IMG/VR virus record: IMGVR_UViG_3300033153_007973
Location: 170,009 to 234,008 of that record
Reading direction: 5' to 3' (one strand)
DNA length: 64,000 nt
The notes beneath the pieces are model-generated. The model ran no database searches. It saw only the letters and a list, made by a program, of their open reading frames with translations, and was not told the DNA's origin. The first letter of the stretch is position 1. Every line of letters starts with the position of its first letter. Below, piece by piece: positions 959-52,023 of this stretch. Made by a program: the position numbers and the translations under genes.

Positions 959-977
959 CGAATTATTCTTAAATGAC

Positions 978-1006
978 TTGACAAGATCTATACAAGACTA
1001 TACGCT
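978..1006 (+). promoter_or_regulatory. sigma70-like promoter for the glycan cluster
   Basis: TTGACA(978-983), 17 nt, TACGCT(1001-1006) in the only gap before 1037; SD GGAGAG follows. Confidence 0.5.
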
Positions 1007-1036
1007 GCCATAAAATAGAGAATAGGAGAGCTTTAG

Positions 1037-2820: not shown

Positions 2821-2823
2821 CTA

Positions 2824-3513: not shown

Positions 3514-3515
3514 TC

Positions 3516-4277: not shown

Positions 4278-4278
4278 C

Positions 4279-5565: not shown

Positions 5566-5569
5566 GATA

Positions 5570-6759: not shown

Positions 6760-7642
6760 CGACCGGTATACATACAACAACTACGGCACAAAGCGCTCGA
6801 TATTTGAAGAAGTTAAAAGCAGAGGAATAGATATAATCTGGATAGACACGTCACAAATGAACAAGATACTTCAGCTCATTAAGGAACACTCTCCAACAAT
6901 GATATGGCTAGCCAGTTCAGCGCTGTTGCTCAGTCCTGCAGTGAAAGCAAAGATAAAGATACCCATTGTTGGATTTGGTTTCTCGGATCCCTATTACTTC
7001 AAACCAGATCGGTTTAAGAGTTATGATCTATATGTCACCAACCATATAGGTACCTATGAGAAGTACAAGACTACCATTCCTATGCATTATAACCAGACAG
7101 CATGTGATTTCAGGTATCATAAGGTAATGGATACACCCAAGAATATAGATGTATCAGTCATCGGACTGGGTACCCATCCATGGTTTCACGACAAGCAAAC
7201 AAGGATCAAATTCGTTAACAAATTACGATCAGAGACATCCTATAGAATACTAGCATTTGGTGCCCAATGGAATTCTCATCCCGAGAACCATGGATTTATT
7301 ACTGGAGAGAAGTTTCTGCGCATTATCGGTAAGAGCCAGATAGGACTGGATGTGCAAGACGACTGGAGCCCACTGGCGCACCGCATGTTCGAGTATGCAG
7401 CATGTGGGGTACCTGTTATCACCAGAGCACGACCAGAAATTGCTATGGTGTTCAATGACAAGGAAATTATTACATATACCACATACAGCGACATCTTGTC
7501 CAAGTTAAACCACTATATGAAACATCCAGAGCAGCTAGCAGAGATTGGCAAGAGGGCACACGAACGATGTAAGAGACAACACAATATCAATTTCAGGGTG
7601 GACGGGATACTACAGTTTGTCAAGAAACACGAAGGAGACTAG
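6740..7642 (+). CDS. CgeB-like glycosyltransferase
   Basis: 'FSDPY', 'RMFEYAACG', 'EQLAEIGKRAHERC..QHNINFRV'. Confidence 0.8.
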   Translation: MKILYFSDRYTYNNYGTKRSIFEEVKSRGIDIIWIDTSQMNKILQLIKEHSPTMIWLASSALLLSPAVKAKIKIPIVGFGFSDPYYFKPDRFKSYDLYVTNHIGTYEKYKTTIPMHYNQTACDFRYHKVMDTPKNIDVSVIGLGTHPWFHDKQTRIKFVNKLRSETSYRILAFGAQWNSHPENHGFITGEKFLRIIGKSQIGLDVQDDWSPLAHRMFEYAACGVPVITRARPEIAMVFNDKEIITYTTYSDILSKLNHYMKHPEQLAEIGKRAHERCKRQHNINFRVDGILQFVKKHEGD

Positions 7643-8197
7643 GTGCATATCCCTGAAGTATCTAAAGTAATCCATAATGCTGTCGCTTCATATGTCAAGA
7701 AATATGATCCTTCTACTGTGTTGGATATTGGAGGATTCAGAAGACTGCAACAGTTTCTGACAGCCAAAGTAACTGATGCTAATATCAATAATGGAATCGA
7801 TGGCACGAACCTCCCATATAAAGATAACAGCTTCGATGTCACGACATCGATTGCTACGTTAGAACATGTGAACAACCAAGCGAAATTCATGTCGGAATCA
7901 ATCAGAACAGCAAGGATTGCTTCCGTACACTGGTTCCCATTTGGACCTGATGGTCAACGGATAGAAGATCTTCTTAAAGGATATAATCATAAACATGACT
8001 GTGTCGTTCCAAGTCTATCTATCTTCCTGGATCTCTTCAATCGATATGATTTCAGTGTCCATATGTATCCTAAATACAAAGACCACCTCAAGAATATGGC
8101 ACACATAAAACCACAGATTATGAATAGCGATACTATGAGGTTCATTGAGAGATTTAGTTCGAGATCATATGGAATCATACTGGAGATAATCAAATGA
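7643..8197 (+). CDS. class I SAM methyltransferase-like protein
   Basis: 'VLDIGG', 'LPYKDNSFDVTTSIATLEHV'; GTG start. Confidence 0.75.
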   Translation: MHIPEVSKVIHNAVASYVKKYDPSTVLDIGGFRRLQQFLTAKVTDANINNGIDGTNLPYKDNSFDVTTSIATLEHVNNQAKFMSESIRTARIASVHWFPFGPDGQRIEDLLKGYNHKHDCVVPSLSIFLDLFNRYDFSVHMYPKYKDHLKNMAHIKPQIMNSDTMRFIERFSSRSYGIILEIIK

Positions 8198-8922
8198 AGA
8201 TAAAGCTCTCCGGATATATGATCAGTTATAATGAGAAACCCATTATAAAGTTATCCATCATGAACTTACTACAGTTCGTTGATGAGTTAATCATTACCGA
8301 TGGAGAGAGTACCGACGGCACAGCAGAGCTTCTAGATAGAATGGCTAATAGATTTAGTAAGATCAAACTATATCCAATGCGACAGAGATATGGCAGAAAG
8401 AGAACTGTATCTGGTCGTGAAAGAACTGCCGATGGCTTTAATGAAATGGAACGTAGAACATATGCTATATCTAAGTGTTCGGGCACGCATATATTAATGA
8501 AAGATGTAGATGAATTGTATCACGAACACACGGATTTCCACAATCTGATAGAGAAGAATCCTGCATTTCTATCCTTTAGTCAGCTACAATATGAAGTAGT
8601 GCCAGGAAATAAGTTCTTGCCTCATATACGAATCAATGGCCATCATAGTGTACCAAGACTTATTAAAAACACTCCAGATATAGTCTTCAAAGATATACGT
8701 AACCTGAATGGAATTGATTGTTGTCTCTTTAGTAACAAGTATAACAAACGACTGGCAGATATCAAGGACATGGTTGGTGCATATAGTATGTGGCACTACA
8801 AAATGATGTTTGATAAGAAACAGCTATACAAGCACTACAAGAGCAAGGATCGGGCAACAAAGCCATTGTTAACATTTCCATCAGAACATAATAAATTCAT
8901 TGACATGGGCAGCTTAACGTGA
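8194..8922 (+). CDS. GT2-family glycosyltransferase
   Basis: 'MISYNE', 'DELIITDGESTDGT', 'KDVDE'. Confidence 0.8.
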   Translation: MKIKLSGYMISYNEKPIIKLSIMNLLQFVDELIITDGESTDGTAELLDRMANRFSKIKLYPMRQRYGRKRTVSGRERTADGFNEMERRTYAISKCSGTHILMKDVDELYHEHTDFHNLIEKNPAFLSFSQLQYEVVPGNKFLPHIRINGHHSVPRLIKNTPDIVFKDIRNLNGIDCCLFSNKYNKRLADIKDMVGAYSMWHYKMMFDKKQLYKHYKSKDRATKPLLTFPSEHNKFIDMGSLT

Positions 8923-21973: not shown

Positions 21974-23436
21974 CCTGCATATCCTCTTTCATAGTAATAT
22001 GGTGAGCGCCATTCTGATATCTCCATCCTCTTCTTGTGCCACTTATACTCCAGACTTCTGCACTTATCATAGATATGTCTGAGATATCCGGGAAGGAACT
22101 TCTTTCCGATTCTTAGCTTGTAAATTATGTTCATTTCTTGTTTTATCTTGTCGATATTATTAACTGTATTATTTGTTTCACATCCTACCACCTTGGTTTC
22201 TCTTAACATCACAGCTGATTCTATAATCGAACCGATTAAAGCCATCATGTATACATTGTCTGCATAGTTAAAGTATCTGGTATCTGGACATATGAAACCA
22301 ACACAATGGCTGCACTTCGCCTGTTTTTTGGCTTCCTTTGAGTCATGGAGAAATGATACATCATTACTCGCATATTCTTTAACTAATCTTTCCATTGATG
22401 GTAAAGCAGCACCAAATATCCCAGTTGGTAGGATAACAATTGGAAAGAATGGTCTTGGTAAAATTGAACCCATTGCTAACATTCTGCGTGAGAACATCTC
22501 TGCCTCATCTGATGATCTATACCCACTGTCAGGCTTTGGAGGTCTATCGATTATCTGTCTTGTGTCTCTAGCAATATGCTTACAGTATGGAACTTTATAT
22601 ATCCATGATGGTATGGTTTGATGGTCTATCTCCTTGTTTGAGAGTGTGTGTTGCAATGTGTCCAGATTTGATAGAAGAATCGAGTTCCGACTGCTGTTAG
22701 GTTGACATACAAAATCGACCTTGGGAAAGAATCCTTTGTTTACTGCAGTTACAATTGCTTGACCTGCACTAGTGACCATTGCTTCACATACTGTGCTAAT
22801 CTTTCTATTATATCGTGTTGGATCTAGCAGTGATGTTATTAAAGCTTCTTGCATATGTTTCTTTTCGTGTGCAATGAAGAATCCAGAAAGACATTTCTTA
22901 AAGTTAGGCCTCCAGTCGCTTTGTAACCTGCTTGGTAAGTATGAAGATGCAATATTCTCCTCGTGTGTATCGATAAAGCTGCTATCTCCTGTAGTAAATC
23001 GTCTGTATCTTATGCCTCGATTACCTTGTCTCACGGGGTACTGGATTGACAAAGACTGAGATGACATCATTATTCCATGTAGGTGATCTTGTGTGTATTG
23101 TGATGATACTTGGTGAACACTATCTGATACATGAGTTCTCATTGGTCTCATAATGGGTATGATTCTGGAGCTATCTGCCAAGTTATTCATTTCTTCTGTA
23201 TTATTTGCAGCGAATTCACAGAGTCTTTGTCGATCTACAGTGCCGAAATCATTTGCTTCTATGGGAGCGATAGATCGAAATGTATTATATCCATGATATA
23301 GATATGATCGAAGTGTAGATTCTATATTACATCTTGATTGATTATACGTTGCTAACTCAAGAACTCGTACATCCTCCGTCGTGTGTTCTTCTCTTGGAGT
23401 AGCAAGAAGTGGTATAGAAACTGTTTTTATCTTCAT
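21970..23436 (-). CDS. hypothetical protein (488 aa)
   Basis: Long ORF coupled by ATGA overlaps on both sides; no motif recognised. Confidence 0.6.
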   Translation of the reverse strand: MKIKTVSIPLLATPREEHTTEDVRVLELATYNQSRCNIESTLRSYLYHGYNTFRSIAPIEANDFGTVDRQRLCEFAANNTEEMNNLADSSRIIPIMRPMRTHVSDSVHQVSSQYTQDHLHGIMMSSQSLSIQYPVRQGNRGIRYRRFTTGDSSFIDTHEENIASSYLPSRLQSDWRPNFKKCLSGFFIAHEKKHMQEALITSLLDPTRYNRKISTVCEAMVTSAGQAIVTAVNKGFFPKVDFVCQPNSSRNSILLSNLDTLQHTLSNKEIDHQTIPSWIYKVPYCKHIARDTRQIIDRPPKPDSGYRSSDEAEMFSRRMLAMGSILPRPFFPIVILPTGIFGAALPSMERLVKEYASNDVSFLHDSKEAKKQAKCSHCVGFICPDTRYFNYADNVYMMALIGSIIESAVMLRETKVVGCETNNTVNNIDKIKQEMNIIYKLRIGKKFLPGYLRHIYDKCRSLEYKWHKKRMEISEWRSPYYYERGYAG

Positions 23437-26400
23437 GTAGAACCTCTCTCATCTGCCTTCCTGATAACCAACTGTAGGAAGTCTCTGTATGATATGTGTT
23501 TTGTCTCCTCGACTGATACGTCTTTGTCTTTCAGATATTTGTCGATCGTCTTTCTCTTTGAGGAGATAACTTCGAATTTATATTGATCAATCATAAACCT
23601 GTTGAATATTACATAGACCTCTGGGTTACCTGTCTGATCGGGCCTCAGGATTCTTCCGATAGCTTGTTCATAGAACGCTGGTGACCATGGAATATCTGAC
23701 ATGATAACAACATCAGCTTGTTCCAAATTGAAGCTCTTTCCAAGGATTCCTATGTTACCAACAGCTACACTATTTGGAGTCTTTCTGAAGTTCTCGATGA
23801 CTTTATATCTTGCTGAAGGTGTCATCTTATTTGAAAGCAAGAAAGTACTCGCTCCACTGTTCTTGAATAGATTACTAAGATCTATACTGGCTTCTGTGAA
23901 TCCTGTAAAGACTAGTACACTTCTTCCCTCACTGAGTTTGTCAATGACCAGGTCTCTTGTTACTAATTGCTTAGCTGTTGGTGTGTTCTGCCATGTTGGA
24001 TCAAGAAGTTTTGGACACTCAGAGATTTTCATCATGGCGATTAGTCGTGCTAAGCTTTTGCTTTCATCTCTGACGAATTCTCTTGAGCCATCTAGAATAG
24101 ACAGATATTGTTCGAACTGTGTATTGTTTGGTTCCGCGACAACTTTCATCTCTTTCACATTGAAACGAAACATATCGTTCTTTACCAATCCTTCATTCTC
24201 TCTGGCGACCTTGACAACCAAGTTTCGGACATAGTCCTTTGTGAATTCAGGATCTGAGCTCATCTTATCATTGATTTTTGCAAGCCTCATATTTGTTGTT
24301 GATATATTATGAACAATCTTGTATGTTGGTTCTCCCTTTTTGTCCTCTCCGAGCCTGGCTACTACCTTCTTATTTTTCCGTCTGATCTCTGTTCCTATGT
24401 GGGATATCGGAGTGGCATCGACCTTGGATACACAGCTCTTGCTACCATATCCGATCACTGCATATGTAGCTAGCTCAGCCATCTTATTAGTAATGACTGT
24501 ACCACTCATGAACATGGAGCGAGCTGGTCTTAGTCTGATCGCTGACTTTGACTTCAAAGATGTAGGAGATTTAACGTTTTGACAATTTTTGACGAGTAAT
24601 CCGTTAGCTACATAGTTGTGATTATCTCCTACGTCGATGTTGAACACTCTTTGATCTTGCTGAGGACTGTATCCAGATTTTCCATTACTTCTTTGTTCCA
24701 GAATCGTAACATTTTCCACCCTAGCATAAGCAATACGGATTCTTTCCTTTTGTCGAGATACTTCCATTTCTTTGTCTTGTGAGATTCTCCGTCTACTTCG
24801 ATTGCTATCTTCTTGTCGGGAATTGCTAGGTCGACTGCATACTTTGTCGGAAGACAGAGATCTGGTCTCTTCCTTCTGAGATTCTTTAGACCGATCTGAA
24901 ATTCCATTGGGTATCCTGTTGCTTTGTGAAGCTTCAGTTGTGGCACAGTTAACTTCCCGTTTCCTCCTCTGGAGAGAAACGTGGGGTTCTTTTTCCATCT
25001 CTTCTTTGTGCCAGCAATAGCTTTCCTCTGAAATTCTGGGTCTGCGTTCATTCGTTTCATTCGTTCTGATTGTGCTTTGAATCCAGTCTTTCGTAGAGCA
25101 GCAGTTGCTTTCTTCTTGTATTTCTTTTGTATAATGTGGAATCTCTTTTGTTGTTTTGGTTGACTGCATCGCCATTTTGCAGAACATTGCTTTCCGCAGA
25201 ATCGTGTGTTCTTGCTCTTTCTCGTTAGTCCGGTACCTAGGCTGAAGTCTTTCCCACACCACTTGCAGGTTTTTGTTATCATCTTTACACGGCGAAGAAT
25301 TCCTGCACACTTCGTACTGCAGCATTTTTGTTGTCTTGTTGATTTTGGTCTGTAATATGTGAACGTTGTTCCACATGAAGCACACTGTCTCGTTTCGTAG
25401 TTCCTTTGCCTTGACATAGCCTTTCTCCTTTGTCCAGATTTTATGGTCTGGAGTACATATGATGCTATGTCCATTATTATATTCTACTTTGACGAGGTTG
25501 TCAACATATGGCTTATGAAAATAATGTACTACGGGTTTGTATTCCCAGTTGTTAGTTTCTAAGTTCTTTGATAATGCGAGTACATCTTCTCTGTTCGTGA
25601 CAATGTCTCCAATCTTTCTTAGCCCTTTGTTTGTCATAATTTCAGTGTCATATGTGAAACACTCATCAAAGATTACCAGATCAAATAGTCCTCGTAGATC
25701 ATCACCTGTAGTATGTATCTTGTATAGGCTCTTCTGTTTCTTATCTTCATTGGACCGTCGACTCTTTATCTTTGTCTCAGCACCTAAGATCGAGTACCCG
25801 ATTAAGGTTATGGGTGTGGCATTTTCCTTGGCGAGTGGGATGTCTGTCAGCTTCTTGATGATGAAAGGTTTCTCCATCTTCAGTTTATCCATCTCTCTTA
25901 TGAATTCATTGAGAGCACCGGGTTCTACGCATACTAGTGTCCTCTTCACACCGAGTGCAAGATGGAGTCCGATTGCGATCCGAGTTTTGCCTAGGCCTAC
26001 ATCACATTGTAGTACTGAAGCCTTCTTTCTCATGGCCATAGCAATTGAATACTTCTGATGCCACTGCAGCTCTAGCTTGTGTATCTTGTTGATCTTTTCG
26101 ATCTGTCCCATGTGTGTTCTGAACAAGTCATCTTTCTCTACTTGAGCAGGTGGAGGGGACATCCATTTCTTGATGTTCCTTACTGCTTTAATAATAGTAG
26201 TCTTAGTGCTATCGTCAACGTCGAAGCCTTCTTTTTCCAAGATTCCTAGTAATAGCTCAATTCTCAGAACGGAGCCCTCAAACTTTGCTAGCTCTATTTC
26301 GAATTCATATGCAACAATGTTCACATCACATGCATCTAGTCTTTTGCGAGTGTTTCGAGCACTATTAGATTCAGGATCATCTTCCTCTGTTGTACCTTGA

Positions 26401-27185
26401 ATATTTACTGGATCAATATCTGATAGGATATGATCATTTACGACCGCAGGAAGACCATAATTGGTGGATCCGTCTAGTGCTTGACTCAATCCCTCGTTTC
26501 TTTGTTGGAATTGGTATCTATATACGTTTCCAATATATCTTCCTTGTCGACCCTCAATTGGAAAGATTCTGTTCTGAACCAAGAGAACAATTGATGATAT
26601 AAGATCCATTGGCAGAGATGTTATCTGTGCATGTTCTCTGGGTAGCCCAGGATGTAGATGTAGATTAAATGGGAATCTGATACGAAGTGTTCGTCCAGAG
26701 ACGATAGAGACTATCTTAGATTCAGCATCTATAGCAGGTTTCTTTGTGAAATATAAATAGTCGATAATCTTTCTGTTCTTGACCAGGACAACTACGCTAT
26801 TAAAAAGCTGCGGACACTTAGTCTTCGTCTTTATGCCCTTCTTAGCAGCTTTGAAATCATCTTCGTTATCGATAATGATGATAGCGTTATTGACCCGTAT
26901 CTTCTGGTCAAGTAGGTTAATCGCATTGACTCTCTCGAAATTAATATGCTTACTGAGAATCATGTCGATTCCATCTGCCGATTTTCCCACAAGGACTAGA
27001 TGATATTTTCTTGATGCGGGACCCTTAGCTTTTCGTGTAAATCCAAGATCAGTTAGATAGCTTGTAAGAGTATCCTCTTCTCGTTTAGCTTTGAGATGTT
27101 CAAGGTTATCATCAAACTCTTTAATGTCACTATCTACAGACGCTAACAGATCGTCTACAGATATAAGATCTAGATCATCTGGCAT
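23433..27185 (-). CDS. SNF2-family helicase containing one intein
   Basis: Motif I 'DVGLGKT'; motif II 'VIFDE|CQ' split by the intein; 'MSGTVITN'; C-terminal 'KSFNLEQADVVI...QAIGRILRPDQ'. Confidence 0.9.
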   Translation of the reverse strand: MPDDLDLISVDDLLASVDSDIKEFDDNLEHLKAKREEDTLTSYLTDLGFTRKAKGPASRKYHLVLVGKSADGIDMILSKHINFERVNAINLLDQKIRVNNAIIIIDNEDDFKAAKKGIKTKTKCPQLFNSVVVLVKNRKIIDYLYFTKKPAIDAESKIVSIVSGRTLRIRFPFNLHLHPGLPREHAQITSLPMDLISSIVLLVQNRIFPIEGRQGRYIGNVYRYQFQQRNEGLSQALDGSTNYGLPAVVNDHILSDIDPVNIQGTTEEDDPESNSARNTRKRLDACDVNIVAYEFEIELAKFEGSVLRIELLLGILEKEGFDVDDSTKTTIIKAVRNIKKWMSPPPAQVEKDDLFRTHMGQIEKINKIHKLELQWHQKYSIAMAMRKKASVLQCDVGLGKTRIAIGLHLALGVKRTLVCVEPGALNEFIREMDKLKMEKPFIIKKLTDIPLAKENATPITLIGYSILGAETKIKSRRSNEDKKQKSLYKIHTTGDDLRGLFDLVIFDECFTYDTEIMTNKGLRKIGDIVTNREDVLALSKNLETNNWEYKPVVHYFHKPYVDNLVKVEYNNGHSIICTPDHKIWTKEKGYVKAKELRNETVCFMWNNVHILQTKINKTTKMLQYEVCRNSSPCKDDNKNLQVVWERLQPRYRTNEKEQEHTILRKAMFCKMAMQSTKTTKEIPHYTKEIQEESNCCSTKDWIQSTIRTNETNERRPRISEESYCWHKEEMEKEPHVSLQRRKREVNCATTEASQSNRIPNGISDRSKESQKEETRSLSSDKVCSRPSNSRQEDSNRSRRRISQDKEMEVSRQKERIRIAYARVENVTILEQRSNGKSGYSPQQDQRVFNIDVGDNHNYVANGLLVKNCQNVKSPTSLKSKSAIRLRPARSMFMSGTVITNKMAELATYAVIGYGSKSCVSKVDATPISHIGTEIRRKNKKVVARLGEDKKGEPTYKIVHNISTTNMRLAKINDKMSSDPEFTKDYVRNLVVKVARENEGLVKNDMFRFNVKEMKVVAEPNNTQFEQYLSILDGSREFVRDESKSLARLIAMMKISECPKLLDPTWQNTPTAKQLVTRDLVIDKLSEGRSVLVFTGFTEASIDLSNLFKNSGASTFLLSNKMTPSARYKVIENFRKTPNSVAVGNIGILGKSFNLEQADVVIMSDIPWSPAFYEQAIGRILRPDQTGNPEVYVIFNRFMIDQYKFEVISSKRKTIDKYLKDKDVSVEETKHISYRDFLQLVIRKADERGST
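24585..25661 (-). mobile_element. intein (359 aa) inserted at DE^CQ of helicase motif II
   Basis: Block A 'CFTYDTEIMT..G..KIGDI'; block B 'ICTPDHKI'; block F 'VFNIDV..NHNYVANG'; block G 'LVKN' followed by Cys+1. Confidence 0.92.
24629..25417 (-). CDS. Vsr/DUF559-like (EDxHD-type) endonuclease with Zn-finger repeats, nested in the +1 frame of the intein
   Basis: SD AAGGAG 7 nt before ATG 25417; 'CASC..CCSTKC', 'CKWC..FCGKQC'; 'YAVDLAI...IAIEVDGESH...DKRKESVLLMLGWKMLRFWN'. Confidence 0.85.
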   Translation of the reverse strand: MSRQRNYETRQCASCGTTFTYYRPKSTRQQKCCSTKCAGILRRVKMITKTCKWCGKDFSLGTGLTRKSKNTRFCGKQCSAKWRCSQPKQQKRFHIIQKKYKKKATAALRKTGFKAQSERMKRMNADPEFQRKAIAGTKKRWKKNPTFLSRGGNGKLTVPQLKLHKATGYPMEFQIGLKNLRRKRPDLCLPTKYAVDLAIPDKKIAIEVDGESHKTKKWKYLDKRKESVLLMLGWKMLRFWNKEVMENLDTVLSKIKECSTST

Positions 27186-28058: not shown

Positions 28059-28772
28059 TTATCCTCCTCTAATATGAGTGTCCGCATGAACACTACTTGC
28101 TATCTCCAGAAATGGGAGCAGTGCACCCTCTGGTGTTGATTGAATATTATCGCCCTCTACTTGCTGATATGGCTGTAGATAGTAAGGGACTTCGTCTGGT
28201 ATTAGTCTTGCAATTGCTCTGATGATCCTCTCGTTCACATAAAGAGGATGACATGTTGTTCTGATCTCGTACTGGAAATCTAACGATGTACGATAGTTTT
28301 CCATTACATCTAAGCTAGATATGATTTGCTTCCAGTGTTTGGCTTCATATCCTTTTCGATTTTGTCCTGCTTGTGGATATGTCTTGATATCCATTGCGAC
28401 ATAATCGATGTGAAGTCTGGTTATCACATATGATAATCTGTCAGCATATGTACCATTTGTATCTAGCTTAACCATTAAGCCAAGTTTGTGTGCCTCCAAT
28501 GCAATGGTTTGAATCTCATTGAATGATGAGCATGGGGGTTCACCGTGTAATGGTTCACCCCCGGTTATCACAACTGCATCGATAAGATCTTTGCTCTTTC
28601 TCATCCGGTGTATTACTCTTCTCATTTCTATTGATTCCACAACTTGTGGCATTCTTGCGAGTGCCATGTTGTGACAGTATGTACATTTTAGGTTGCATCC
28701 CTTCATGAAGATCACCATAGCTGGTAAGCTAGGGTAATCAACAAGAGAGAGGTTTGTTATTGCTCCTACCAT
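28059..28772 (-). CDS. nrdG: anaerobic ribonucleotide reductase activating radical SAM protein
   Basis: 'GCNLKCTYCHN', 'VVITGGEP', 'KLDTNG', 'DYVAMDIK'; adjacent to nrdD. Confidence 0.9.
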   Translation of the reverse strand: MVGAITNLSLVDYPSLPAMVIFMKGCNLKCTYCHNMALARMPQVVESIEMRRVIHRMRKSKDLIDAVVITGGEPLHGEPPCSSFNEIQTIALEAHKLGLMVKLDTNGTYADRLSYVITRLHIDYVAMDIKTYPQAGQNRKGYEAKHWKQIISSLDVMENYRTSLDFQYEIRTTCHPLYVNERIIRAIARLIPDEVPYYLQPYQQVEGDNIQSTPEGALLPFLEIASSVHADTHIRGG

Positions 28773-28787
28773 GGATTACTCCTTCAA

Positions 28788-30908
28788 TTATGCTGGTAGG
28801 CAGTATGTTCTTCTGTCTCCATACTCGCTTTTCTTTCCGTCATTCCAGCTACTGACCGGTCTGTAATAACCAACCACTCTTGAATAGACATTCACTATAG
28901 CGATACATCCTTCGTGTGGACATTTATGATGTTCGCCTTTTAGATATCCATGTTCTTCGCAGATCGTAAACGTTGGTGTGATTGAAATATATGGTAACTT
29001 GTACTTCGAAGTGATCTTCTTGATGAGACCTGCTAATGCTTCTGGGTCTGGCGCACTTTCACCTAGGAATGAATGAAGCACAGTACCACCGGTGTAAAGA
29101 CACTGTAACTCATCTTGATGATCTAGTGCCTTAAACAGATCATCTGTGTGTCCTACAGGTAGATGTGTTGAATTAGTATAATATACAATCTTGTCTCCTG
29201 CATGAGCAGCTTCGGCACCAAACGATTTCTGATCTGCTTTTGCTAGTCTGTAACATGCGCCTTCTGCTGGTGTTGCTTCTAGATTATATAGATTTCCGGT
29301 AGTGACTTGGAATTCTTGTGTGATTTTCTTCATGAACGTGAGTGTCTCTATAGCTAATGCCTTTCCGGCTTTGGTTTGTATCCCATCTCCCAGGAGATTG
29401 AGACATGCTTCATGCATACCTACTAGACCAACTGTTGAGAAATGGTTTGTATAATATGCACCACTCCGTTGTTTAATTGATCTGAGATAGAACTTAGAAT
29501 ATGGATAGAGTTCTCTATCCATTAGATCTTCTAAGATCTTGCGTTTAATCTCTAGACTATCTCTTGCAACTTCCATATATGCTTCAACGTTTTCAAAGAA
29601 CTCTTCTTTATCACTTGATATATAAGCGAGTCTTGGTAGGTTAAGTGTGCATACTCCGACACTTCCTGTTAATGGAGCAGATGCAAAGATACCACCAAGT
29701 CTCTTCCTGAGTTCACGATTATCGATAGAAATTCGACAACACATGCTGCGAATATCTTCAGGTTTTATACCTGAGTTTACCATATTAGCAAAGTATGGTA
29801 CGCCTAGTTTTGCTGTCATTTCCCATACCTTTTTTGCCGCGGGAGAATCCCAGATGAATTCATCTGTAATATTATAAGTTGGGATCGGGAAGGAGTGAAT
29901 AGCACCCCTTGAGTCACCCTCCATCATTGTTTCTGCGAAAGCGATATTGATCATCTCCATCTCTTTCGCACATTCTTTATATGTGAAATCCATCTGTTTG
30001 CCACCAATGATACATGGTCGATCGGCATACAGTGATGATGGCACCATGTCCATCGTGATGTTCGAGAACGTTTGTTGAAACCCAGTTCTCAGTGGCGAGT
30101 TCATATTGTATACGAACTCTTGAATGCCTTGCTTTACTTGCTTCTGGTTTAGTCCATCCTTCTTGATGAATGGAGCTAATAGTGTATCAAAGTTCGAAAG
30201 CGCAACAGCTCCTGCAATTTCTCCTTGGAGCATGTATAGGAAATTCATTATTTGACCAAGGATAGATGAGAAATGAGTTGCTGGTCCAGAAATTGTCTTC
30301 TGTGGAACACCTGTGATACCAGTCATTAGAAGATCTTCCAAGTCCCAACCGCAACAATAACACGCAAGTGATCCAAGATCATGAATATGTATATACCCAA
30401 ACTTATGTGCATCTGCTATCTCAGAAGGATAAATTCTATCCAACCAGTATTTAGCAGTAGTGCTGCTCGATAGATGGTTGTTTAATCCTTGAAGTGAATA
30501 CGTCATGTTTGAATTCTCTTTGACGCGCCAGTCCTTTGCGCCTAGATAATCATCCATGACTTGCATAGTTTCAGAGAACAGATTGTCGATCTTCTTCAGT
30601 CTCTTCTCTTCTGCTCTCTCGAGAATGAATTTCTTTGCTACGTTCTTGTGTTCTGAATTTAACAGAACTTCTTCAATGGTATCGCTTATCTGATTACCAC
30701 TGGGTGTTTCCTTCTTGTCTTTTGTGAGTGTTTGTGTTACTAAACCAGCTATATTTTTCGAGAATGTCTTTGGTCCCTTTACCTTGCAGGATGCAGCAAG
30801 TTTTAGAATCTTGTTTCTGATATGGTCTTCTTTATACTTGGCGATCTTACCGCTATGTAGTCTCACTCGTCTTGGGGCATAGTCCTTCTTAGTTTGCTGT
30901 GCGCTCAT
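28788..30908 (-). CDS. nrdD: class III anaerobic ribonucleoside-triphosphate reductase with ATP-cone-like N-terminus
   Basis: 'IHIHDL', 'YCCGW', 'SMCCR', 'NLEATPAEG', 'YTNST', glycyl-radical motif 'VYSRVVGYYRP'. Confidence 0.95.
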   Translation of the reverse strand: MSAQQTKKDYAPRRVRLHSGKIAKYKEDHIRNKILKLAASCKVKGPKTFSKNIAGLVTQTLTKDKKETPSGNQISDTIEEVLLNSEHKNVAKKFILERAEEKRLKKIDNLFSETMQVMDDYLGAKDWRVKENSNMTYSLQGLNNHLSSSTTAKYWLDRIYPSEIADAHKFGYIHIHDLGSLACYCCGWDLEDLLMTGITGVPQKTISGPATHFSSILGQIMNFLYMLQGEIAGAVALSNFDTLLAPFIKKDGLNQKQVKQGIQEFVYNMNSPLRTGFQQTFSNITMDMVPSSLYADRPCIIGGKQMDFTYKECAKEMEMINIAFAETMMEGDSRGAIHSFPIPTYNITDEFIWDSPAAKKVWEMTAKLGVPYFANMVNSGIKPEDIRSMCCRISIDNRELRKRLGGIFASAPLTGSVGVCTLNLPRLAYISSDKEEFFENVEAYMEVARDSLEIKRKILEDLMDRELYPYSKFYLRSIKQRSGAYYTNHFSTVGLVGMHEACLNLLGDGIQTKAGKALAIETLTFMKKITQEFQVTTGNLYNLEATPAEGACYRLAKADQKSFGAEAAHAGDKIVYYTNSTHLPVGHTDDLFKALDHQDELQCLYTGGTVLHSFLGESAPDPEALAGLIKKITSKYKLPYISITPTFTICEEHGYLKGEHHKCPHEGCIAIVNVYSRVVGYYRPVSSWNDGKKSEYGDRRTYCLPA

Positions 30909-38881: not shown

Positions 38882-39300
38882 TGTTCTTTCCTTGCTAGTG
38901 CCATCATGATGCACTTATAGTTTCTGAGAATACGAGCAGACTTATCTGCTTCATCTAATGAGTTTGTAATATTTGGATTATTAATGCGTGCAGATGTAAG
39001 TAGATTCTTGAAGTCATTTGCAGTAGATGATTTGGCGGAGTGTCCATGATTTTCTAGTGTTCTTATGATATAATCATCTGGTGAATAGTTCTCAGGTGGA
39101 GTTATTTTATCTGGGAGTATGACATACGTAGTACTCTCTCCTTCAGAGTAGAGATATACTCTGGGAACTTCATCAGTTCCCGTTGGTAAGAGAGTTTCAT
39201 GTGGTATGGGACTACCAACTGCCCAGCCGTTACTTATTAAAGCTCGGCGAAGGGATGCAGTAGTCCTGCCGAGCTGTGTATTTACATGAAAGCCATTCAT
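38878..39300 (-). CDS. hypothetical protein
   Basis: ATGA-coupled to neighbours. Confidence 0.5.
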   Translation of the reverse strand: MNGFHVNTQLGRTTASLRRALISNGWAVGSPIPHETLLPTGTDEVPRVYLYSEGESTTYVILPDKITPPENYSPDDYIIRTLENHGHSAKSSTANDFKNLLTSARINNPNITNSLDEADKSARILRNYKCIMMALARKEQ

Positions 39301-40466
39301 TTATTCTTTACCATCTTGAAGGCGTATGAGATCCTGGAGTCTTCTCCCTTTACTCCACCAGCCATGTTAACATAGAAGTTCTTCTGGTTTACTTGGTAGA
39401 CTCGGATACCGACCTTGTCTTCTTCGGCTGCATCACCGACACATTTTAGCATCCTCGAGAACATTCCTGCTACACACTTAACATCTGTCTCTTTACCCGT
39501 AAGTTTATATGAAGAACCGTTCACTGTTGTACTGAAGCTACCAGATGATGTTTGAACTCCAAGGTGCACGCCCGAAGATTTAAATGCCATTGGGAGTTGT
39601 AGTCCAGGACCAGCCATCATGGTAGCTGTAGAGAGTGCATCTCTGAGTTTCTTGACTGGAACCTCCATGGTACTAGCGACAGTTTTCATAAGACCATGTA
39701 GCTTACGGATCTGCGCAATACCAGTGCCGCCCTCTGTCTTTGAGTATGACATGATTATTTTACATGAGTCGTTCTCGAGTCTGACGATCTTGTCTCCGAT
39801 GCTGATCTTAAGTGGTGCTTTCTTCGTGCTTTGTCCTATGGCTCTGACTGCTTGCATTAGAGATTTAGAGTTTGTCTCTACATCCATAGTACTTGTTATG
39901 CCCTTGTTCTTGATATCAAGGGTTGCGATCACAGAGTTACAACCAATAGCAATATTGGCTTGCCCAGGTTCTGTATGAATAATCACTTTGAAGGTAGCAC
40001 CCTTGACGTCTCCGATAGATAAGCTGGAGATTATCTCTGTGAATACAGAGAGCGTGTTAGGACTCATAACCAAGATATCTTCATAGGTGTCCTTCGCTGC
40101 GTCAACTAACATGGGTTTCATTTGTTCCATGTCTAACTCATTTGCTGACAGGCTGAACCGTCCACCTGGTCCTCTAATCTGTATGTTTTTGCCAATTCGC
40201 ATTTCAACATTGCCTTCCCTACATGTCATAAGGACATTCAGGAATCTTTGGAAGTCAATAGCAATAGGACCAAATGTATCTGGATCCTTTCCCTCTTCGA
40301 CTGGCATTTGCATCACTGTAATCGCGCGTGCGGATGCTGATGAGACAACAGATACCAGGCTTGCTCCTTTAGAAAACAACACCACCCGTTTTGAATCAAT
40401 GGATGGTGCTGTAAGAGATCTTAGCCTGGAGAAATGCTCAACAAGTTCTCCTCCGTTAATCTTCAT
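39297..40466 (-). CDS. divergent beta sliding clamp (DnaN-like)
   Basis: 389 aa, clamp-like size with a repeating alpha/beta pattern ('GPIAIDFQRFLNVL', 'MEVPVKKLRDALSTA'); lies near dnaX and polB. Confidence 0.55.
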   Translation of the reverse strand: MKINGGELVEHFSRLRSLTAPSIDSKRVVLFSKGASLVSVVSSASARAITVMQMPVEEGKDPDTFGPIAIDFQRFLNVLMTCREGNVEMRIGKNIQIRGPGGRFSLSANELDMEQMKPMLVDAAKDTYEDILVMSPNTLSVFTEIISSLSIGDVKGATFKVIIHTEPGQANIAIGCNSVIATLDIKNKGITSTMDVETNSKSLMQAVRAIGQSTKKAPLKISIGDKIVRLENDSCKIIMSYSKTEGGTGIAQIRKLHGLMKTVASTMEVPVKKLRDALSTATMMAGPGLQLPMAFKSSGVHLGVQTSSGSFSTTVNGSSYKLTGKETDVKCVAGMFSRMLKCVGDAAEEDKVGIRVYQVNQKNFYVNMAGGVKGEDSRISYAFKMVKNK

Positions 40467-40494: not shown

Positions 40495-40846
40495 GGTGGA
40501 GTAGGTGGGACTCGAACCCACGGCGACTTTTCGCTGGTTCCCGCAAGGGTACTCTAAGCGTACTCACCCTGAGTGGCGCCTAACCCAATAGCTACCCCTG
40601 AGACCCCATAGAGAGCGCCGTCCGACTGTAAGCCAGACAGTCCTCTAATCCTTCTCAGAATCGCTTGGATCTAGGACGATCACGGAGATCCCTCGGCTTT
40701 CGCCATCTTCCTTATACGGGCGCAGGTCATAGACCAAACACGGGCCGAAGCCACTATAATTCCGTGGAAGTGGGATATTCCTGACCTTCCTTGTCATACA
40801 CCATCGAGGCGGGAGGAAAAGTTCTCTTCCGCTGAGATACTACTCC
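40495..40846 (-). ncRNA. tRNA-shelled, tmRNA-like RNA (352 nt)
   Basis: Acceptor GGAGTAG/CTACTCC, A73, CC; D arm TCTC-AGCGGAA-GAGA; stems CTTTTC/GAAAAG and TCCCGC/GCGGGA; T arm GTGGG-TTCGAGT-CCCAC; two H-type pseudoknots inside. Confidence 0.75.
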
Positions 40847-40862: not shown

Positions 40863-41591
40863 TTACTTTCTACTGCGTCTTTTGCTGATTCTTTTCTTCT
40901 TGTATTGGTTCTTACAGTACTTGTTGAATCCTTCATCGGTACCATATGAATCATAGAATGCTTTCCTATGTCTCTTATAGATACGCATAACATCACGAAC
41001 ATACTTAGCGTTTCTTACATTATAATAGTGGTAGTTTCCCCATCCTACATTGTATAGTTCGATGACTACCTTAAGGTTGTCTTCGTCCATTGTACCATCT
41101 TCGTAGTACATGGGATACTTTTTAGCTAGCCATTCAAGAAGGCCAACCCCACCATGAATGTTATTCTCTATGTTATATACTTTCCATTTGTTGAGCTCCC
41201 AGCCAATGATTTTACCATTGGTATTCTTTACTGGGTCAAAGTAGCTTCTTCCAGTTTCCCATTCAGCCTGCTTGGCTCCGAGTCTTACGAGCTGCATCAG
41301 TCCCCTGGCTTTCTTTGGACTGTATGCATATTGCTTGTAAGCACTTTCATTTGACATGATAGCAGTGACTAGTGGAGGCTCAATGATTTGCTTCCTTGTA
41401 GCACTTGCTATCGATTTCATGATTCTTCCCTCGAGCTTAAGTGTCTTGGGAGAATACATCTTCATCTCATTTCTGATCATACTCATAAAACTGTCGCTAC
41501 CGCTATGGAGGTTGCTCTCGGTAATGAGCACGAAGGTCAGGGCGACAAGAGCAATCAGAGTATACTTGATTCGCTTACGCATAGTGTACAC
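40863..41591 (-). CDS. lytic transglycosylase (SLT domain) with N-terminal signal/anchor
   Basis: 'AIMSNESAY', 'SPKKARGLMQL', 'NIHGGVGLL', 'YNVG', 'YVRDV'. Confidence 0.85.
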   Translation of the reverse strand: MYTMRKRIKYTLIALVALTFVLITESNLHSGSDSFMSMIRNEMKMYSPKTLKLEGRIMKSIASATRKQIIEPPLVTAIMSNESAYKQYAYSPKKARGLMQLVRLGAKQAEWETGRSYFDPVKNTNGKIIGWELNKWKVYNIENNIHGGVGLLEWLAKKYPMYYEDGTMDEDNLKVVIELYNVGWGNYHYYNVRNAKYVRDVMRIYKRHRKAFYDSYGTDEGFNKYCKNQYKKKRISKRRSRK

Positions 41592-50408: not shown

Positions 50409-51065
50409 TTAATCGTCATCCTCTTCCTCCTCATCCCCATATGTTTTGGGGAATCTCTTTTTGATGCTCTCTGGTATTGAGCGGCGTAGTTTCCTAAGTA
50501 TGAATCCTGCAGCTCTTAGGTCATTCCTGTTAGTACTGGATGAGAGTTCCATAGCATCTTTCTCACTAAATATGAACGTGTTTTGTTTCTTCGTAACAGG
50601 ATCCCAGATTCGGATCTGAATGCCGTCGATGAGTGACCTCCCGCGGACCCGATCGGCACTATCGCCCCAGTTTTCATCTGGATCTTTAACCCATATGCTC
50701 TCATGGCTTGAGTTAAAGTATCCCTTCCCGCTGATGTCGTCACGATCGTTGATTGCCAACATTTTCTCAACCTTCCAGTGAAGATCATCATTTTCAAACT
50801 TTGGATGTTCTACTTGTGGTGGCACGACTAAAGTCTTAGGATCTAGCTTAGGCTCATGTGTGAGATTAGTATTACATGTTATAGTTGTAACCGATGCAAT
50901 AAGAAAGAGAAAGATTAGTCCCCCAGCGACAACATATGTTCCATTTACCGTGTTTAATAGTAACTGTACGATCTTCTTTAGTATGTCCCAGATATCTTTG
51001 AACTTCTCTCCTATTGAGTTGAGTAGGTTGAAGATCTCTTGTTCTTTACTTTTCTTCTTTTGCAT
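50409..51065 (-). CDS. membrane-anchored hypothetical protein
   Basis: TM 'VVAGGLIFLFLIASV'. Confidence 0.5.
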   Translation of the reverse strand: MQKKKSKEQEIFNLLNSIGEKFKDIWDILKKIVQLLLNTVNGTYVVAGGLIFLFLIASVTTITCNTNLTHEPKLDPKTLVVPPQVEHPKFENDDLHWKVEKMLAINDRDDISGKGYFNSSHESIWVKDPDENWGDSADRVRGRSLIDGIQIRIWDPVTKKQNTFIFSEKDAMELSSSTNRNDLRAAGFILRKLRRSIPESIKKRFPKTYGDEEEEDDD

Positions 51066-52023
51066 TATTAATCTCCCTTCTGTAGATATCAGTGACAAAC
51101 TTCTGCGCTAGTGTTGACATCGGTTTGTCAGGAAGATTTGATGTCTTCATAAGTCCTTCGATCTGACTAATAGTTGTCGTAATGATCGTATCAATTACAT
51201 AGAACTTGATCTTACCTGTCTTAATTTGCAATAGGAAGTCTGCATTCGGCCGCGGGAATGTGATTTTCTTATCCCTAAGGAGCTCACGTGCTTCTTCAGC
51301 TACACGTACGGCGTGCATCAATGCTTTCCAGTCGTTGTACTCCATGTTGGCTGCTTTCTTTACGCGTTTACCATACTTGCTGAGAATGTTTTTGATGATC
51401 TTGACTGCTTGTTCTATAGAATCATTCTCAGAGATCATTTTGCCACATACCTTAAGGTATTTTTCCTTTCTGCCTGTGCCATCTTTATGTATAATCTCTT
51501 CGAAAGATATATGCTCTTTAGGAGATTTGGTGATGTCAATTTCGCAGTCCTTGATCTTTAGGGGAGGAGATCCTTTGCAATCGGGGTCTCTTTTGGAATA
51601 TGGAAGTAGGATATCATGTATAGTCTGTGCTACTTTCATTCTCTCAGCTTTGACACAATACATATAGGCTTGTGCTTTGCAGAATCCCACCATTTTTGTG
51701 ACATTCTTGCTGATGAAATGCTTCCTGCCTACTTCAACCAGTTTATGCCAGTCATCTGTAGCATCATGAACCATATTATCAGGAGCAAATAGCATATCAT
51801 GCGCGGAAGTCTGTCCTTCCATGAGTAACTGTATATATCTGTGCAAGGGAAGGCGTTCGATGTCTAGATCATCGACGTTATTGTTACGAGTGATTTTGTC
51901 TGCATTCTGAAGAAGAATGTCATCGATATCAGGGATGTATACTTCCTTAAGGTCTGTATCTGATGTGGGCAAAGCGGTACCGTACAGATGCGACCCAACG
52001 GTCACTTTAGCAATGACTTTCAT
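51046..52023 (-). CDS. Pol-beta superfamily nucleotidyltransferase (RlaP / T4 NrdC.11-like)
   Basis: 'GSHLYGTALPTSDTDLKEVY', 'WKALMHAVR...FPRPNADFLLQIKTG'. Confidence 0.85.
   Translation of the reverse strand: MKVIAKVTVGSHLYGTALPTSDTDLKEVYIPDIDDILLQNADKITRNNNVDDLDIERLPLHRYIQLLMEGQTSAHDMLFAPDNMVHDATDDWHKLVEVGRKHFISKNVTKMVGFCKAQAYMYCVKAERMKVAQTIHDILLPYSKRDPDCKGSPPLKIKDCEIDITKSPKEHISFEEIIHKDGTGRKEKYLKVCGKMISENDSIEQAVKIIKNILSKYGKRVKKAANMEYNDWKALMHAVRVAEEARELLRDKKITFPRPNADFLLQIKTGKIKFYVIDTIITTTISQIEGLMKTSNLPDKPMSTLAQKFVTDIYRREINNAKEEK

What the first reader, a model, noticed from the sequence alone, without database searches (positions are those of the whole stretch)
40495..40846. tRNA/tmRNA hybrid: full D arm, A3-U70 acceptor and a 283-nt pseudoknotted body
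Seen (minus strand): canonical acceptor, D and T arms; the anticodon stem CTTTTC/GAAAAG continues as TCCCGC/GCGGGA, like tmRNA helix P2. At RNA nt 51-81 there is an H-type pseudoknot (TGAC/GTCA plus GGAAG/CTTCC). It is followed by 'AUUAUAGUG GCU', which matches the E. coli resume context 'AAUAGUC GCA' at a similar position (nt 96 vs 90). A second pseudoknot lies at 40659-40691 (GGATCT/AGATCC plus GATCGT/GCGATT), and UUCG and GAAA tetraloops are present. The 352-nt length is tmRNA-like. Known: tmRNAs lack a D stem and need G3-U70 for AlaRS; this RNA has a D stem and A3-U70. The putative tag ASARVWSMTCARIRKMAKAEGSP* (40751-40680) has no AA-type degron. Inference: a non-alanine or non-degradative ribosome-rescue RNA, or a tRNA with an unknown insert type.
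Basis: partly seen in the sequence, partly recalled or inferred. Interest (0 to 1): 0.85.

Follow-up and report, generated by a model that had tools for sequence, protein, structure and literature searches.

The report
tRNA-framed structured RNA in phage
A rare group of large uncultivated phages carries a conserved ~350-base RNA built as a complete tRNA body whose anticodon loop is replaced by a long rod and a ~230-base folded domain; it is neither a tmRNA nor a recognisable group I intron, so it is a new RNA family of unknown function.

Summary
The RNA is real. The minus strand at 40846-40495 has a full tRNA frame around a ~280-nt insert. I found three homologues in related uncultivated phages (L215, L216 partial, L217), all in the same gene order: GH108, SLT, RNA, sliding clamp. 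Covariation supports the acceptor, T and anticodon stems. It also supports a rod that continues the anticodon stem (H2, H3, H4): 68 of 69 cells paired and 7 compensatory pairs.

The tmRNA reading fails. No copy has G3:U70, the proposed tag ORF and pseudoknots are not conserved, ARAGORN and Rfam are negative, and similarity to E. coli ssrA is at chance level.

A canonical group I intron also fails. RF00028 finds nothing here, yet it finds control phage introns at 51-85 bits. The group-I-like string in the window is absent from the homologues. No U(-1)/omega-G pair restores a 7-nt loop.

A decoding tRNA product is unlikely:
- No splice rule gives one anticodon in all copies.
- The 3' junction and the acceptor/discriminator vary.
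- The stem is 7 Watson-Crick pairs.

Best reading, at about 0.45 confidence: an unspliced, stable non-coding RNA on a tRNA chassis, cut out by tRNA-processing enzymes. It may dimerise through a palindromic loop. A new kind of tRNA intron remains possible.

The parts
40495..40846 (-). Whole RNA gene. It has a tRNA-like frame, a rod and a folded insert. It starts 16 nt after the SLT stop codon and ends 28 nt before the sliding-clamp start codon.
   Evidence: homologues
40840..40846 (-). Acceptor stem, 5' strand (GGAGUAG). It pairs with 40498-40504 (CUACUCC). The discriminator A is at 40497, followed by CC.
   Evidence: 7 of 7 pairs kept in 3 sequences, 6 of them with compensatory changes
40823..40837 (-). 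D arm (UCUC AGCGGAA GAGA) with A14, G15, G18, G19 and A21. Only the CUC/GAG core pairs in every copy.
40816..40822 (-). Anticodon-stem 5' strand, 7 Watson-Crick pairs (positions 26:44 to 32:38). It pairs with 40526-40532.
   Evidence: 21 of 21 cells paired, 4 compensatory pairs
40815..40815 (-). Single bulged C, invariant in all four copies. It faces the variable 6-7-nt 3' junction at 40533-40538.
40796..40814 (-). Rod, 5' strand: H2 UCCCGC (40809-40814), H3 CUC (40806-40808) and H4 GGUGUAU (40796-40802).
40539..40563 (-). Rod, 3' strand: H4 GUACGCU (40557-40563), H3 GAG (40552-40554), a conserved 7-nt bulge UACCCUU (40545-40551) and H2 GCGGGA (40539-40544).
   Evidence: H2 shows C-G to U-A covariation and H4 has two compensatory pairs. 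This stretch can also form a local hairpin.
40673..40791 (-). Domain PX, a long irregular hairpin. Its base helix is AGGA/UCCU.
   Evidence: MFE. The base helix is AGGG/UCCU in L215 and an unrelated but still paired sequence in L217.
40585..40668 (-). Helix HJ (40663-40668 with 40585-40592), enclosing helix HM (40653-40660 with 40596-40603) and its inner hairpin. This stretch includes the chance group-I-like string.
   Evidence: Equivalent helices with different sequences occur in L215 and L216.
40570..40587 (-). Hairpin with an 8-nt loop UAGGCGCC. The loop carries the 6-nt palindrome GGCGCC (GGUACC in L215, GGCGCC in L217).
   Evidence: The stem covaries, 2 compensatory pairs. The palindrome is kept through a double substitution.
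40505..40521 (-). T arm GUGGG UUCGAGU CCCAC. It is preceded by the variable-loop nucleotides with G46 and C48.
   Evidence: 15 of 15 cells paired, 2 compensatory pairs

Best explanation
This is a stable non-coding RNA built on a tRNA chassis. It is probably not a decoding tRNA and not a tmRNA.

Shown:
- The tRNA frame is complete: acceptor, D and T arms, and the nucleotides of the standard tertiary contacts (U8-A14, A9, G15-C48, G18/G19, G46, U54-A58, G53-C61).
- The anticodon stem is lengthened to 7 Watson-Crick pairs. It runs on through three conserved helices (H2, H3, H4), about 23 bp in all.
- The rod ends in a four-way junction that carries two variable domains and a hairpin with a palindromic loop.
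- The gene sits between the SLT and sliding-clamp genes on the same strand. The consensus scan found no promoter-like or terminator-like site flanking it on that strand.

Inferred:
- The RNA is cut out of the operon transcript by RNase P at the 5' end and by tRNA 3'-end enzymes.
- The tRNA frame gives it defined ends and stability. Engineered tRNA scaffolds work this way, and T4 species 1 RNA and YrlA are natural RNAs with tRNA-like modules.
- The insert is the working part. It may pair with a second copy through the GGYRCC loop, and it binds a partner that is still unknown.
- With its anticodon loop replaced by a rod it cannot decode in the ribosomal A site.
- One use that would fit a phage carrying an RlaP RNA-repair gene is to occupy a host factor that recognises tRNA shape. 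This last step is speculation.
For: - Homologues lie in the same gene order in three other uncultivated phages.
- The rod and all tRNA stems covary: rod 68 of 69 cells paired and 7 compensatory pairs, against 29-63% and 0-1 in slid controls.
- The rod is better conserved than the acceptor stem (identity window vs L215 0.88 against 0.29). The discriminator also changes: A, C, A.
- No splice rule yields one anticodon across copies. The options give CCC/CUC/CUC, CCA/CUA/CUA, CCA/CUA/CGA or CCA/AUA/CGA. ARAGORN with introns calls Gly, Thr and Ser at three different insertion sites.
- The 3' junction is the least conserved part (ACCAGC, UAUAGA, GACGAAA).
- The consensus scan found no promoter-like or terminator-like site flanking the RNA on its strand.
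- The loop palindrome survives a double substitution.
- Precedents: engineered tRNA scaffolds (PMC3753655); YrlA, a Y RNA with a tRNA-like module, whose M. smegmatis form is cut by RNase P and given CCA (PMC4201824); T4 rnaC, a stable RNA with a T-arm-like hairpin next to tRNA genes.
Against: - There are no expression data, so processing, stability and dimerisation are all inferred.
- Only three full sequences and one partial one are known.
- An insert at the anticodon loop of a phage tRNA gene is, by precedent, most often an intron.
- Every tRNA tertiary nucleotide is preserved, which would also fit a tRNA that is eventually matured.
- GNRA loops, a receptor-like motif in L217 and two near-isoenergetic alternative folds are features common in ribozymes.
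- Palindromy is supported by one double substitution only (about 0.2 chance given a change).
Confidence: 0.45

Rival explanations
1. A tRNA gene interrupted by a new, non-group-I kind of intervening sequence. The rod brings the two splice sites together in the 1 x 6-7 internal loop next to the anticodon stem. The insert is then removed either by its own catalysis or by an endonuclease plus an RNA ligase. This phage carries an RlaP RNA-repair gene, a family named for its linkage to RNA ligase genes. The product would be a working tRNA.
For: - The position is exactly at the anticodon loop of an otherwise complete tRNA.
- Phage tRNA genes with self-splicing introns are common.
- The insert has a conserved core, GNRA loops and alternative pairings.
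- RlaP is present.
- After a 6-bp stem, the first two loop nucleotides are always C-U, which suits C32-U33.
Against: - No anticodon is consistent under any junction rule.
- The 3' junction is not conserved.
- The product would have a 6-7-bp anticodon stem.
- The acceptor and discriminator are not conserved between close relatives.
- The reading that gives CUA (amber) clashes with TAG being an ordinary stop codon: 19 of 64 genes, and the SLT gene of L217.
- No RNA ligase or splicing endonuclease was found in the 64 kb.
- There is no bulge-helix-bulge motif.
Confidence: 0.22
2. A very divergent group I intron in a tRNA gene, self-splicing with guanosine.
For: - The window copy contains CCAAGC...GAAGGAUUAGAG(G)ACU...GACGGCGC. 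This resembles the Q/P6/R core shared by more than 120 viral group I introns.
- The size and the location are typical.
Against: - RF00028 gives no hit at E<=10 in the window, nor at E<=5 in the three homologue loci. It scores control phage introns at 51-85 bits.
- The core-like string is missing from L215, L216 and L217.
- The variant with the extra G finds only random coding hits in IMG/VR.
- nhmmer finds no extended similarity.
- The intron's 5' and 3' ends pair with each other over 16 bp, which is not the group I topology.
- No U(-1) with omega-G gives a 7-nt loop.
Confidence: 0.05
3. A tmRNA-like ribosome-rescue RNA charged with an amino acid other than alanine.
For: - The architecture resembles tmRNA: a tRNA-like end, a long 5'/3' rod like tmRNA helix 2 and a length of ~350 nt.
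- Rfam tmRNA gives a sub-threshold hit (33 bits).
Against: - That hit aligns only the acceptor and T arm.
- ARAGORN's tmRNA mode is negative in all copies.
- No open frame is conserved.
- There is no G3:U70, and the discriminator varies.
- A full D stem and anticodon stem occupy the place SmpB takes in tmRNA (established tmRNA-SmpB structure, from my own knowledge).
- Similarity to ssrA is at chance level.
- No smpB gene was found in the window.
Confidence: 0.04
4. A cis-acting processing or regulatory element of the operon. The tRNA-like fold recruits RNase P to separate the SLT and sliding-clamp cistrons. The insert tunes the stability or translation of the clamp mRNA, whose start codon lies 28 nt downstream.
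For: - The spacing to both genes is tight and the gene order is conserved.
- The consensus scan found no promoter-like or terminator-like site flanking the RNA on its strand.
Against: A plain tRNA-like fold would be enough for punctuation. That role does not explain a conserved 23-bp rod, a four-way junction or a palindromic loop.
Confidence: 0.12
5. A decaying tRNA pseudogene with junk inserted, of no function.
For: The family is rare (four loci) and there is no working anticodon loop.
Against: Compensatory changes keep every helix intact across phages whose neighbouring SLT protein is only 45% identical. The rod sequences are 75-88% identical.
Confidence: 0.02

Closest known systems
tmRNA (ssrA)
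   Same: It has a tRNA-like acceptor/T-arm module. A long irregular rod is made from the 5' and 3' segments and leads to a large folded body. The length is about 350 nt, and phages are known to encode tmRNAs.
   Different: This RNA has a full D stem and anticodon stem. It lacks G3:U70 and has no conserved tag frame or resume context. ARAGORN and Rfam do not recognise it. Sequence similarity is no better than shuffles, and no SmpB gene is nearby.
Group I introns in bacterial and phage tRNA anticodon loops (for example the IC3 type)
   Same: The location in the anticodon loop of a tRNA gene, the size of 230-280 nt, GNRA loops, and presence in phages.
   Different: There is no RF00028 match. No conserved P/Q/R/S core is present. 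The ends of the insert pair with each other. No U(-1)/omega-G junction restores a 7-nt loop.
YrlA / bacterial Y RNAs
   Same: A non-coding RNA that joins a tRNA-like module (D and T arms, tertiary pairs) to a rod. It is found in phages as well, and M. smegmatis YrlA is cut by RNase P and given CCA.
   Different: The topology is the reverse. In YrlA the free ends are in the rod and the acceptor is closed; here the acceptor is open and the rod is closed. The GNCGAAN0-1G motif is present only in L217. No TROVE/Ro60 gene was seen. This RNA is also much larger.
Engineered tRNA scaffolds for recombinant RNA (Ponchon and Dardel)
   Same: The layout is the same: acceptor, D and T arms are kept, and the anticodon stem-loop is replaced by a hairpin-closed insert. 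The cell then processes and stabilises the RNA.
   Different: Those scaffolds are man-made. This would be a natural counterpart, and its processing has not been tested.
Phage T4 species 1 and 2 RNAs (rnaC, rnaD)
   Same: Small stable phage RNAs of unknown function next to tRNA genes. rnaC ends in a T-arm-like hairpin CCGGGUUCGAAUCCCGG.
   Different: They are 119-139 nt long. There is no complete cloverleaf around a conserved rod, and no sequence relation to this RNA.

Membership tests
tmRNA | G3:U70 wobble pair in the acceptor stem (alanine identity) | tested here: not met
   A3-U70 in the window; G3-C70 in L215 and L217
tmRNA | Conserved tag reading frame with a resume codon and an in-frame stop | tested here: not met
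   The window frame is not kept. The homologues have stops and non-triplet indels at the equivalent place.
tmRNA | tRNA-like domain without a D stem or anticodon stem (the SmpB site) | tested here: not met
   The CUC/GAG D stem is invariant and a covarying 7-bp anticodon stem is present
tmRNA | Recognition by the tmRNA models | tested here: not met
   ARAGORN -m finds nothing. RF00023 scores 33.3 bits against a gathering score of 47, with only the ends aligned. No hit in the homologues. Similarity to ssrA is at chance level.
tmRNA | Works with SmpB and is charged by AlaRS | not testable with these tools
   No SmpB domain in the 66 ORFs scanned. The rest of the 120-234-kb genome was not seen.
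Group I intron | Match to the covariance model of the P3-P9 core | tested here: not met
   No RF00028 hit at E<=10 in the window, nor at E<=5 in the homologue loci. Control phage introns score 51-85 bits.
Group I intron | 5' exon ends in U (U.G in P1), the intron ends in G, and ligation restores a 7-nt anticodon loop | tested here: not met
   I listed all junctions by hand. None fits in all copies.
Group I intron | Conserved Q/R core sequences shared by family members | tested here: not met
   The window-only string is absent from L215-L217. The pattern with the extra G returned only random hits.
Group I intron | Guanosine-dependent self-splicing | not testable with these tools
   Needs an in-vitro assay
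Elongator tRNA | Cloverleaf arms and the tertiary-contact nucleotides | tested here: met
   U8, A9, A14, G15-C48, G18G19, A21, G46, G53-C61 and U54-A58 are present in all copies
Elongator tRNA | 5-bp anticodon stem and a 7-nt loop with U33 and an anticodon conserved among orthologues | tested here: not met
   The stem is 7 Watson-Crick pairs. ARAGORN -i gives Gly(CCC), Thr(AGU) and Ser(CGA) at different sites.
Elongator tRNA | Aminoacylation | not testable with these tools
   The acceptor stem is 29% identical between close relatives and the discriminator is A/C/A. This argues against one fixed identity.
Archaeal/eukaryal protein-spliced tRNA intron | Bulge-helix-bulge motif (two 3-nt bulges 4 bp apart) | tested here: not met
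   The junction is a 1-nt bulge directly opposite a 6-7-nt loop
YrlA / Y RNA | Ro-binding motif GNCGAAN0-1G in a terminal stem, a TROVE gene nearby, and a model match | tested here: not met
   The motif occurs only in L217. No Rfam hit. No TROVE domain in the window.

The most novel reading that the evidence does not exclude
The insert is a new class of tRNA intron. Its conserved rod aligns both splice sites in one internal loop. It is then removed either by its own catalysis or by a phage/host RNA-repair style endonuclease-ligase pathway. That would be the first non-group-I way of splicing tRNA in a bacterial virus.
Probability: 0.2. Interest if true: 0.9.

Novelty: new variant of a known kind. 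Interest (0 to 1): 0.66.

Why it matters
Natural RNAs that reuse the tRNA shape are few: tmRNA, Y RNAs and viral tRNA-like ends. Each of these has revealed a distinct mechanism.

This family keeps every tRNA contact but swaps the decoding loop for a conserved rod and junction domain. If it is unspliced, it is a natural version of the laboratory 'tRNA scaffold'. It may also be a tRNA-shaped decoy or adaptor made by large phages. If it is spliced, it is a new intron type.

Either outcome can be tested with a single Northern blot or RNA-seq experiment. The family is absent from Rfam 15 and from GenBank phage records.

Tried and rejected
1. ARAGORN default and Rfam at gathering and E-value thresholds on the window and homologues found no family.
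2. BLAST of the RNA and its neighbourhood against GenBank phages found nothing.
3. The group I idea. From memory of IC3 cores I picked out CCAAGC..GAAGG..AGAG(G)ACU..GACGGCGC.
   - The loose pattern pulled more than 120 real viral group I introns.
   - Our RNA shares nothing more with them.
   - The exact variant gave only random hits.
   - The homologues lack the string, so I rejected it as chance.
4. Apparent similarity of L215 to the PK1 region of E. coli ssrA is no better than shuffles.
5. The amber-suppressor reading (CUA in L215 and L217) is rejected because TAG is a normal stop codon there.
6. Searching for more relatives:
   - Flanking proteins in IMG/VR returned only the two identical contigs.
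   - The clamp protein had no hits.
   - The SLT profile gave no further close relatives.
   - Three RNA patterns across viral, metagenome and genome collections found nothing new.
7. Downstream gene X as an RNA enzyme: it has a beta-clamp fold.
8. I could not settle the inner pairing of the variable domains with four sequences.
9. I did not run the count of structure pairs and computed the same counts in a script instead.

Full report
**What is there**

The 396-nt gap lies between the SLT transglycosylase gene (40863-41591, minus strand) and the next gene (39297-40466, minus strand). It holds an RNA gene on the minus strand at 40846-40495. Its ends form a textbook class-I tRNA frame:
- acceptor GGAGUAG/CUACUCC with discriminator A;
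- U8 and A9;
- D arm UCUC-AGCGGAA-GAGA;
- variable loop with G46 and C48;
- T arm GUGGG-UUCGAGU-CCCAC.

Between the two strands of the anticodon stem lie about 280 nt. Default ARAGORN finds no tRNA or tmRNA in the window. Rfam 15 finds nothing at gathering thresholds. At E<=10 the only relevant hit is tmRNA at 33 bits (threshold 47). That hit aligns just a pseudo-acceptor and the T arm and skips the body. The insert alone gives no hit at all.

**Setting**

The window is the replication and nucleotide-metabolism region of a large phage using the standard genetic code. It encodes:
- PolB, primase-helicase, clamp loader and RecA;
- NrdD/NrdG, UDG and SSB;
- an intein-bearing helicase;
- an RlaP nucleotidyltransferase.

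A glycosyltransferase cluster lies on the plus strand. The phage is far from anything cultured: PolB is 24% identical to Salinibacter phages. The same DNA occurs in two IMG/VR contigs of 120 and 234 kb. The gene just downstream of the RNA has a beta sliding-clamp fold (TM 0.80). The consensus scan found no promoter-like or terminator-like site flanking the RNA on its strand. It is therefore probably made as part of the operon transcript and must be cut out.

**Homologues**

The RNA itself had no match in GenBank phages. The upstream SLT protein has three relatives at 84, 68 and 45% identity. Their contigs show the same gene order:
- L215 has a full RNA of 304 nt.
- L216 has the 5' 205 nt, up to the contig end.
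- L217 has a full RNA of 338 nt.

Further searches found no other member. These were an SLT profile against 1.8 billion representatives, and three RNA patterns over viral, metagenome and genome collections. The family is rare.

**Structure from comparison**

RNAalifold on the three full sequences and my own pair counts give these helices:

| Helix | Cells paired | Compensatory pairs |
|---|---|---|
| Acceptor | 21/21 | 6 |
| T stem | 15/15 | 2 |
| Anticodon stem (7 Watson-Crick pairs, 26:44 to 32:38) | 21/21 | 4 |
| H2 UCYCGC/GYGRGA | 17/18 | 1 |
| H3 CUC/GAG | 9/9 | 0 (invariant) |
| H4 GGUGUAU/GUACGCU | 21/21 | 2 |

For the whole rod, 68 of 69 cells pair and 7 pairs are compensatory. Partners slid by 1-3 columns give 29-63% pairing and 0-1 compensatory pairs.

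H4 closes a four-way junction with three other arms:
- A long domain PX. Its base helix is AGGA/UCCU in the window and AGGG/UCCU in L215. In L217 the sequence is unrelated but still paired.
- A helix HJ, stacked on a variable domain HM.
- A 5-bp hairpin whose stem covaries.

The 8-nt loop of that hairpin carries a 6-nt palindrome. It is GGCGCC in the window and L217 and GGUACC in L215. Palindromy survives a double substitution, and no conserved partner exists within the RNA. This suggests a loop-loop contact between two copies, but the support is thin.

The 3' strand of H3/H4 can also fold on itself (GGG..CCC plus GUAC/GUAC). Positions 49, 286 and 296 change together. The two folds are within 1-4 kcal/mol in the window and L215. 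I leave this unexplained.

The following are not conserved, or conflict with conserved helices:
- pseudoknot 1;
- pseudoknot 2;
- the 'resume context';
- the 23-residue tag.

The tag and pseudoknot 2 lie in a part of PX that is expanded only in the window copy.

**Not a tmRNA**

- No copy has G3:U70.
- The D and anticodon stems are present.
- No reading frame is shared.
- ARAGORN's tmRNA mode is negative in all copies.
- The homologues give no tmRNA hit.
- Local similarity to E. coli ssrA is no better than shuffles.
- No SmpB domain was found in the 66 ORFs scanned.

**Not a recognisable group I intron**

From memory of IC3 cores I noticed CCAAGC..GAAGGAUUAGAG(G)ACU..GACGGCGC in the window. 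A loose pattern for it recovered more than 120 viral loci, nearly all true group I introns. Rfam scores those at 51-85 bits, and several sit in tRNA clusters. This positive control shows that the model works on phage introns.

Our RNA differs from them in several ways:
- It shares no further similarity with them.
- The exact variant with the extra G finds only random coding hits.
- The three homologues lack the string, because that stretch is part of the variable helices HJ and HM.
- The ends of the insert pair with each other over 16 bp, which is not group I topology.
- No combination of a 5' exon ending in U and an intron ending in G restores a 7-nt loop.
- There is no bulge-helix-bulge motif.

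**Is a working tRNA made at all?**

ARAGORN with introns allowed gives inconsistent calls:

| Copy | Call | Insertion site |
|---|---|---|
| Window | Gly(CCC) | 37/38 |
| L215 | a distorted Thr(AGU) | 34/35 |
| L217 | Ser(CGA) | 35/36 |

I listed every way of joining k nucleotides from the 5' side to 7-k from the 3' side. None gives one anticodon in all copies.
- The readings with C-Y-C place the middle base in helix H2, where it covaries with its partner.
- The reading that gives CUA in L215 and L217 clashes with TAG being an ordinary stop codon.

The 3' junction is the least conserved part of the RNA. The acceptor stem is 29% identical between the window and L215, while the rod is 88% identical. 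The discriminator changes. Any product would also have a 6-7-bp anticodon stem. Selection therefore acts on the tRNA shape and on the rod, not on decoding or charging identity.

**Most likely mechanism (about 0.45)**

I read this as an unspliced, stable RNA on a tRNA chassis. The shape would recruit RNase P and the 3'-end enzymes to release it from the operon transcript, and would protect it. Precedents are:
- engineered tRNA scaffolds (PMC3753655);
- M. smegmatis YrlA, which is cut by RNase P and given CCA (PMC4201824);
- T4 rnaC, a stable RNA with a T-arm-like hairpin beside tRNA genes.

The insert would be the active part, possibly as a dimer. The partner and purpose are unknown. Jumbo phages carry RNA-repair genes such as RlaP to counter host attacks on tRNA (PMC7824862). 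A tRNA-shaped decoy or adaptor is one possibility, but it is speculation.

**Rivals**

| Rival | Probability |
|---|---|
| New non-group-I intron | 0.22 |
| Cis-acting processing or regulatory element | 0.12 |
| Very divergent group I intron | 0.05 |
| tmRNA-like rescue RNA | 0.04 |
| Pseudogene | 0.02 |

**Verdict**

This is a genuine, conserved RNA family that is not in Rfam 15 and that I did not find described in my limited literature searches. The tmRNA reading is not supported, but the alternative 'tRNA with an unknown insert type' is. I file it as a new variant of the known kind 'tRNA-like chimeric RNA'. There is roughly a one-in-five chance that it is a new intron class.

Noticed in passing
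window 23433-27185 (-): A 1250-aa helicase ORF carries an intein (PF14890 Intein_splicing, residues 516-867) ahead of the Helicase_C domain.
   Followed up: no
window 51046-52023 (-): An RlaP-family nucleotidyltransferase (PF10127; phrog_388, E 5e-66). This family is linked to RNA ligases in tRNA repair. No RNA ligase, polynucleotide kinase, CCA enzyme, SmpB or TROVE gene was seen in the 64 kb.
   Followed up: partly
window 39297-40466 (-): The gene just downstream of the RNA has no sequence-family hit, but its predicted fold matches the bacterial beta sliding clamp (TM 0.80).
   Followed up: partly
window 398-8922 (+): A run of glycosyltransferases, a B12/radical-SAM enzyme, methyltransferases, a hexapeptide acyltransferase and a polysaccharide pyruvyl transferase. 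This is a sugar-modification cluster, unusual in size for a phage.
   Followed up: no
window 40639-40668 (-), RNA nt 179-208: The string CCAAGC..GAAGGAUUAGAGGACU mimics the Q/P6/R core of group I introns. It is absent from the homologues, so it is a chance look-alike that could mislead motif-based scans.
   Followed up: yes
L010-L128 (IMG/VR); e.g. L043:4932-5448, L117:4959-5150, L073:7322-7511, L091:2365-2549: More than 120 viral contigs carry canonical group I introns with the core aAUCagcagCCAAGC-P6-GAAGGUUCAGAGACUA. L043 has two of them 80 nt apart, and several lie in or beside tRNA clusters.
   Followed up: partly
L217:1848-1869 (+); L215 and L216 hairpins: In L217 the stem of the palindromic-loop hairpin reads UAUGG...CCUAAG, the canonical 11-nt GNRA-tetraloop receptor. 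L215 and L216 hairpins end in GUAA, GCAA and GUGA loops, and the window has GAAA. This hints at tertiary docking.
   Followed up: no
window 40545-40569 (-), RNA nt 278-302: An alternative local hairpin (GGG..CCC plus GUAC/GUAC) competes with rod helices H3/H4. Positions 49, 286 and 296 change together in L217. The two folds differ by 1-4 kcal/mol. It may be a switch.
   Followed up: partly
window 28059-30908 (-): Anaerobic ribonucleotide reductase NrdD (E 3e-182) with its radical-SAM activase. This points to a host living without oxygen.
   Followed up: no
L217:1479-1603 (+): L217 has an extra 125 nt between the SLT stop codon and the RNA that the other copies lack. I did not examine it.
   Followed up: no
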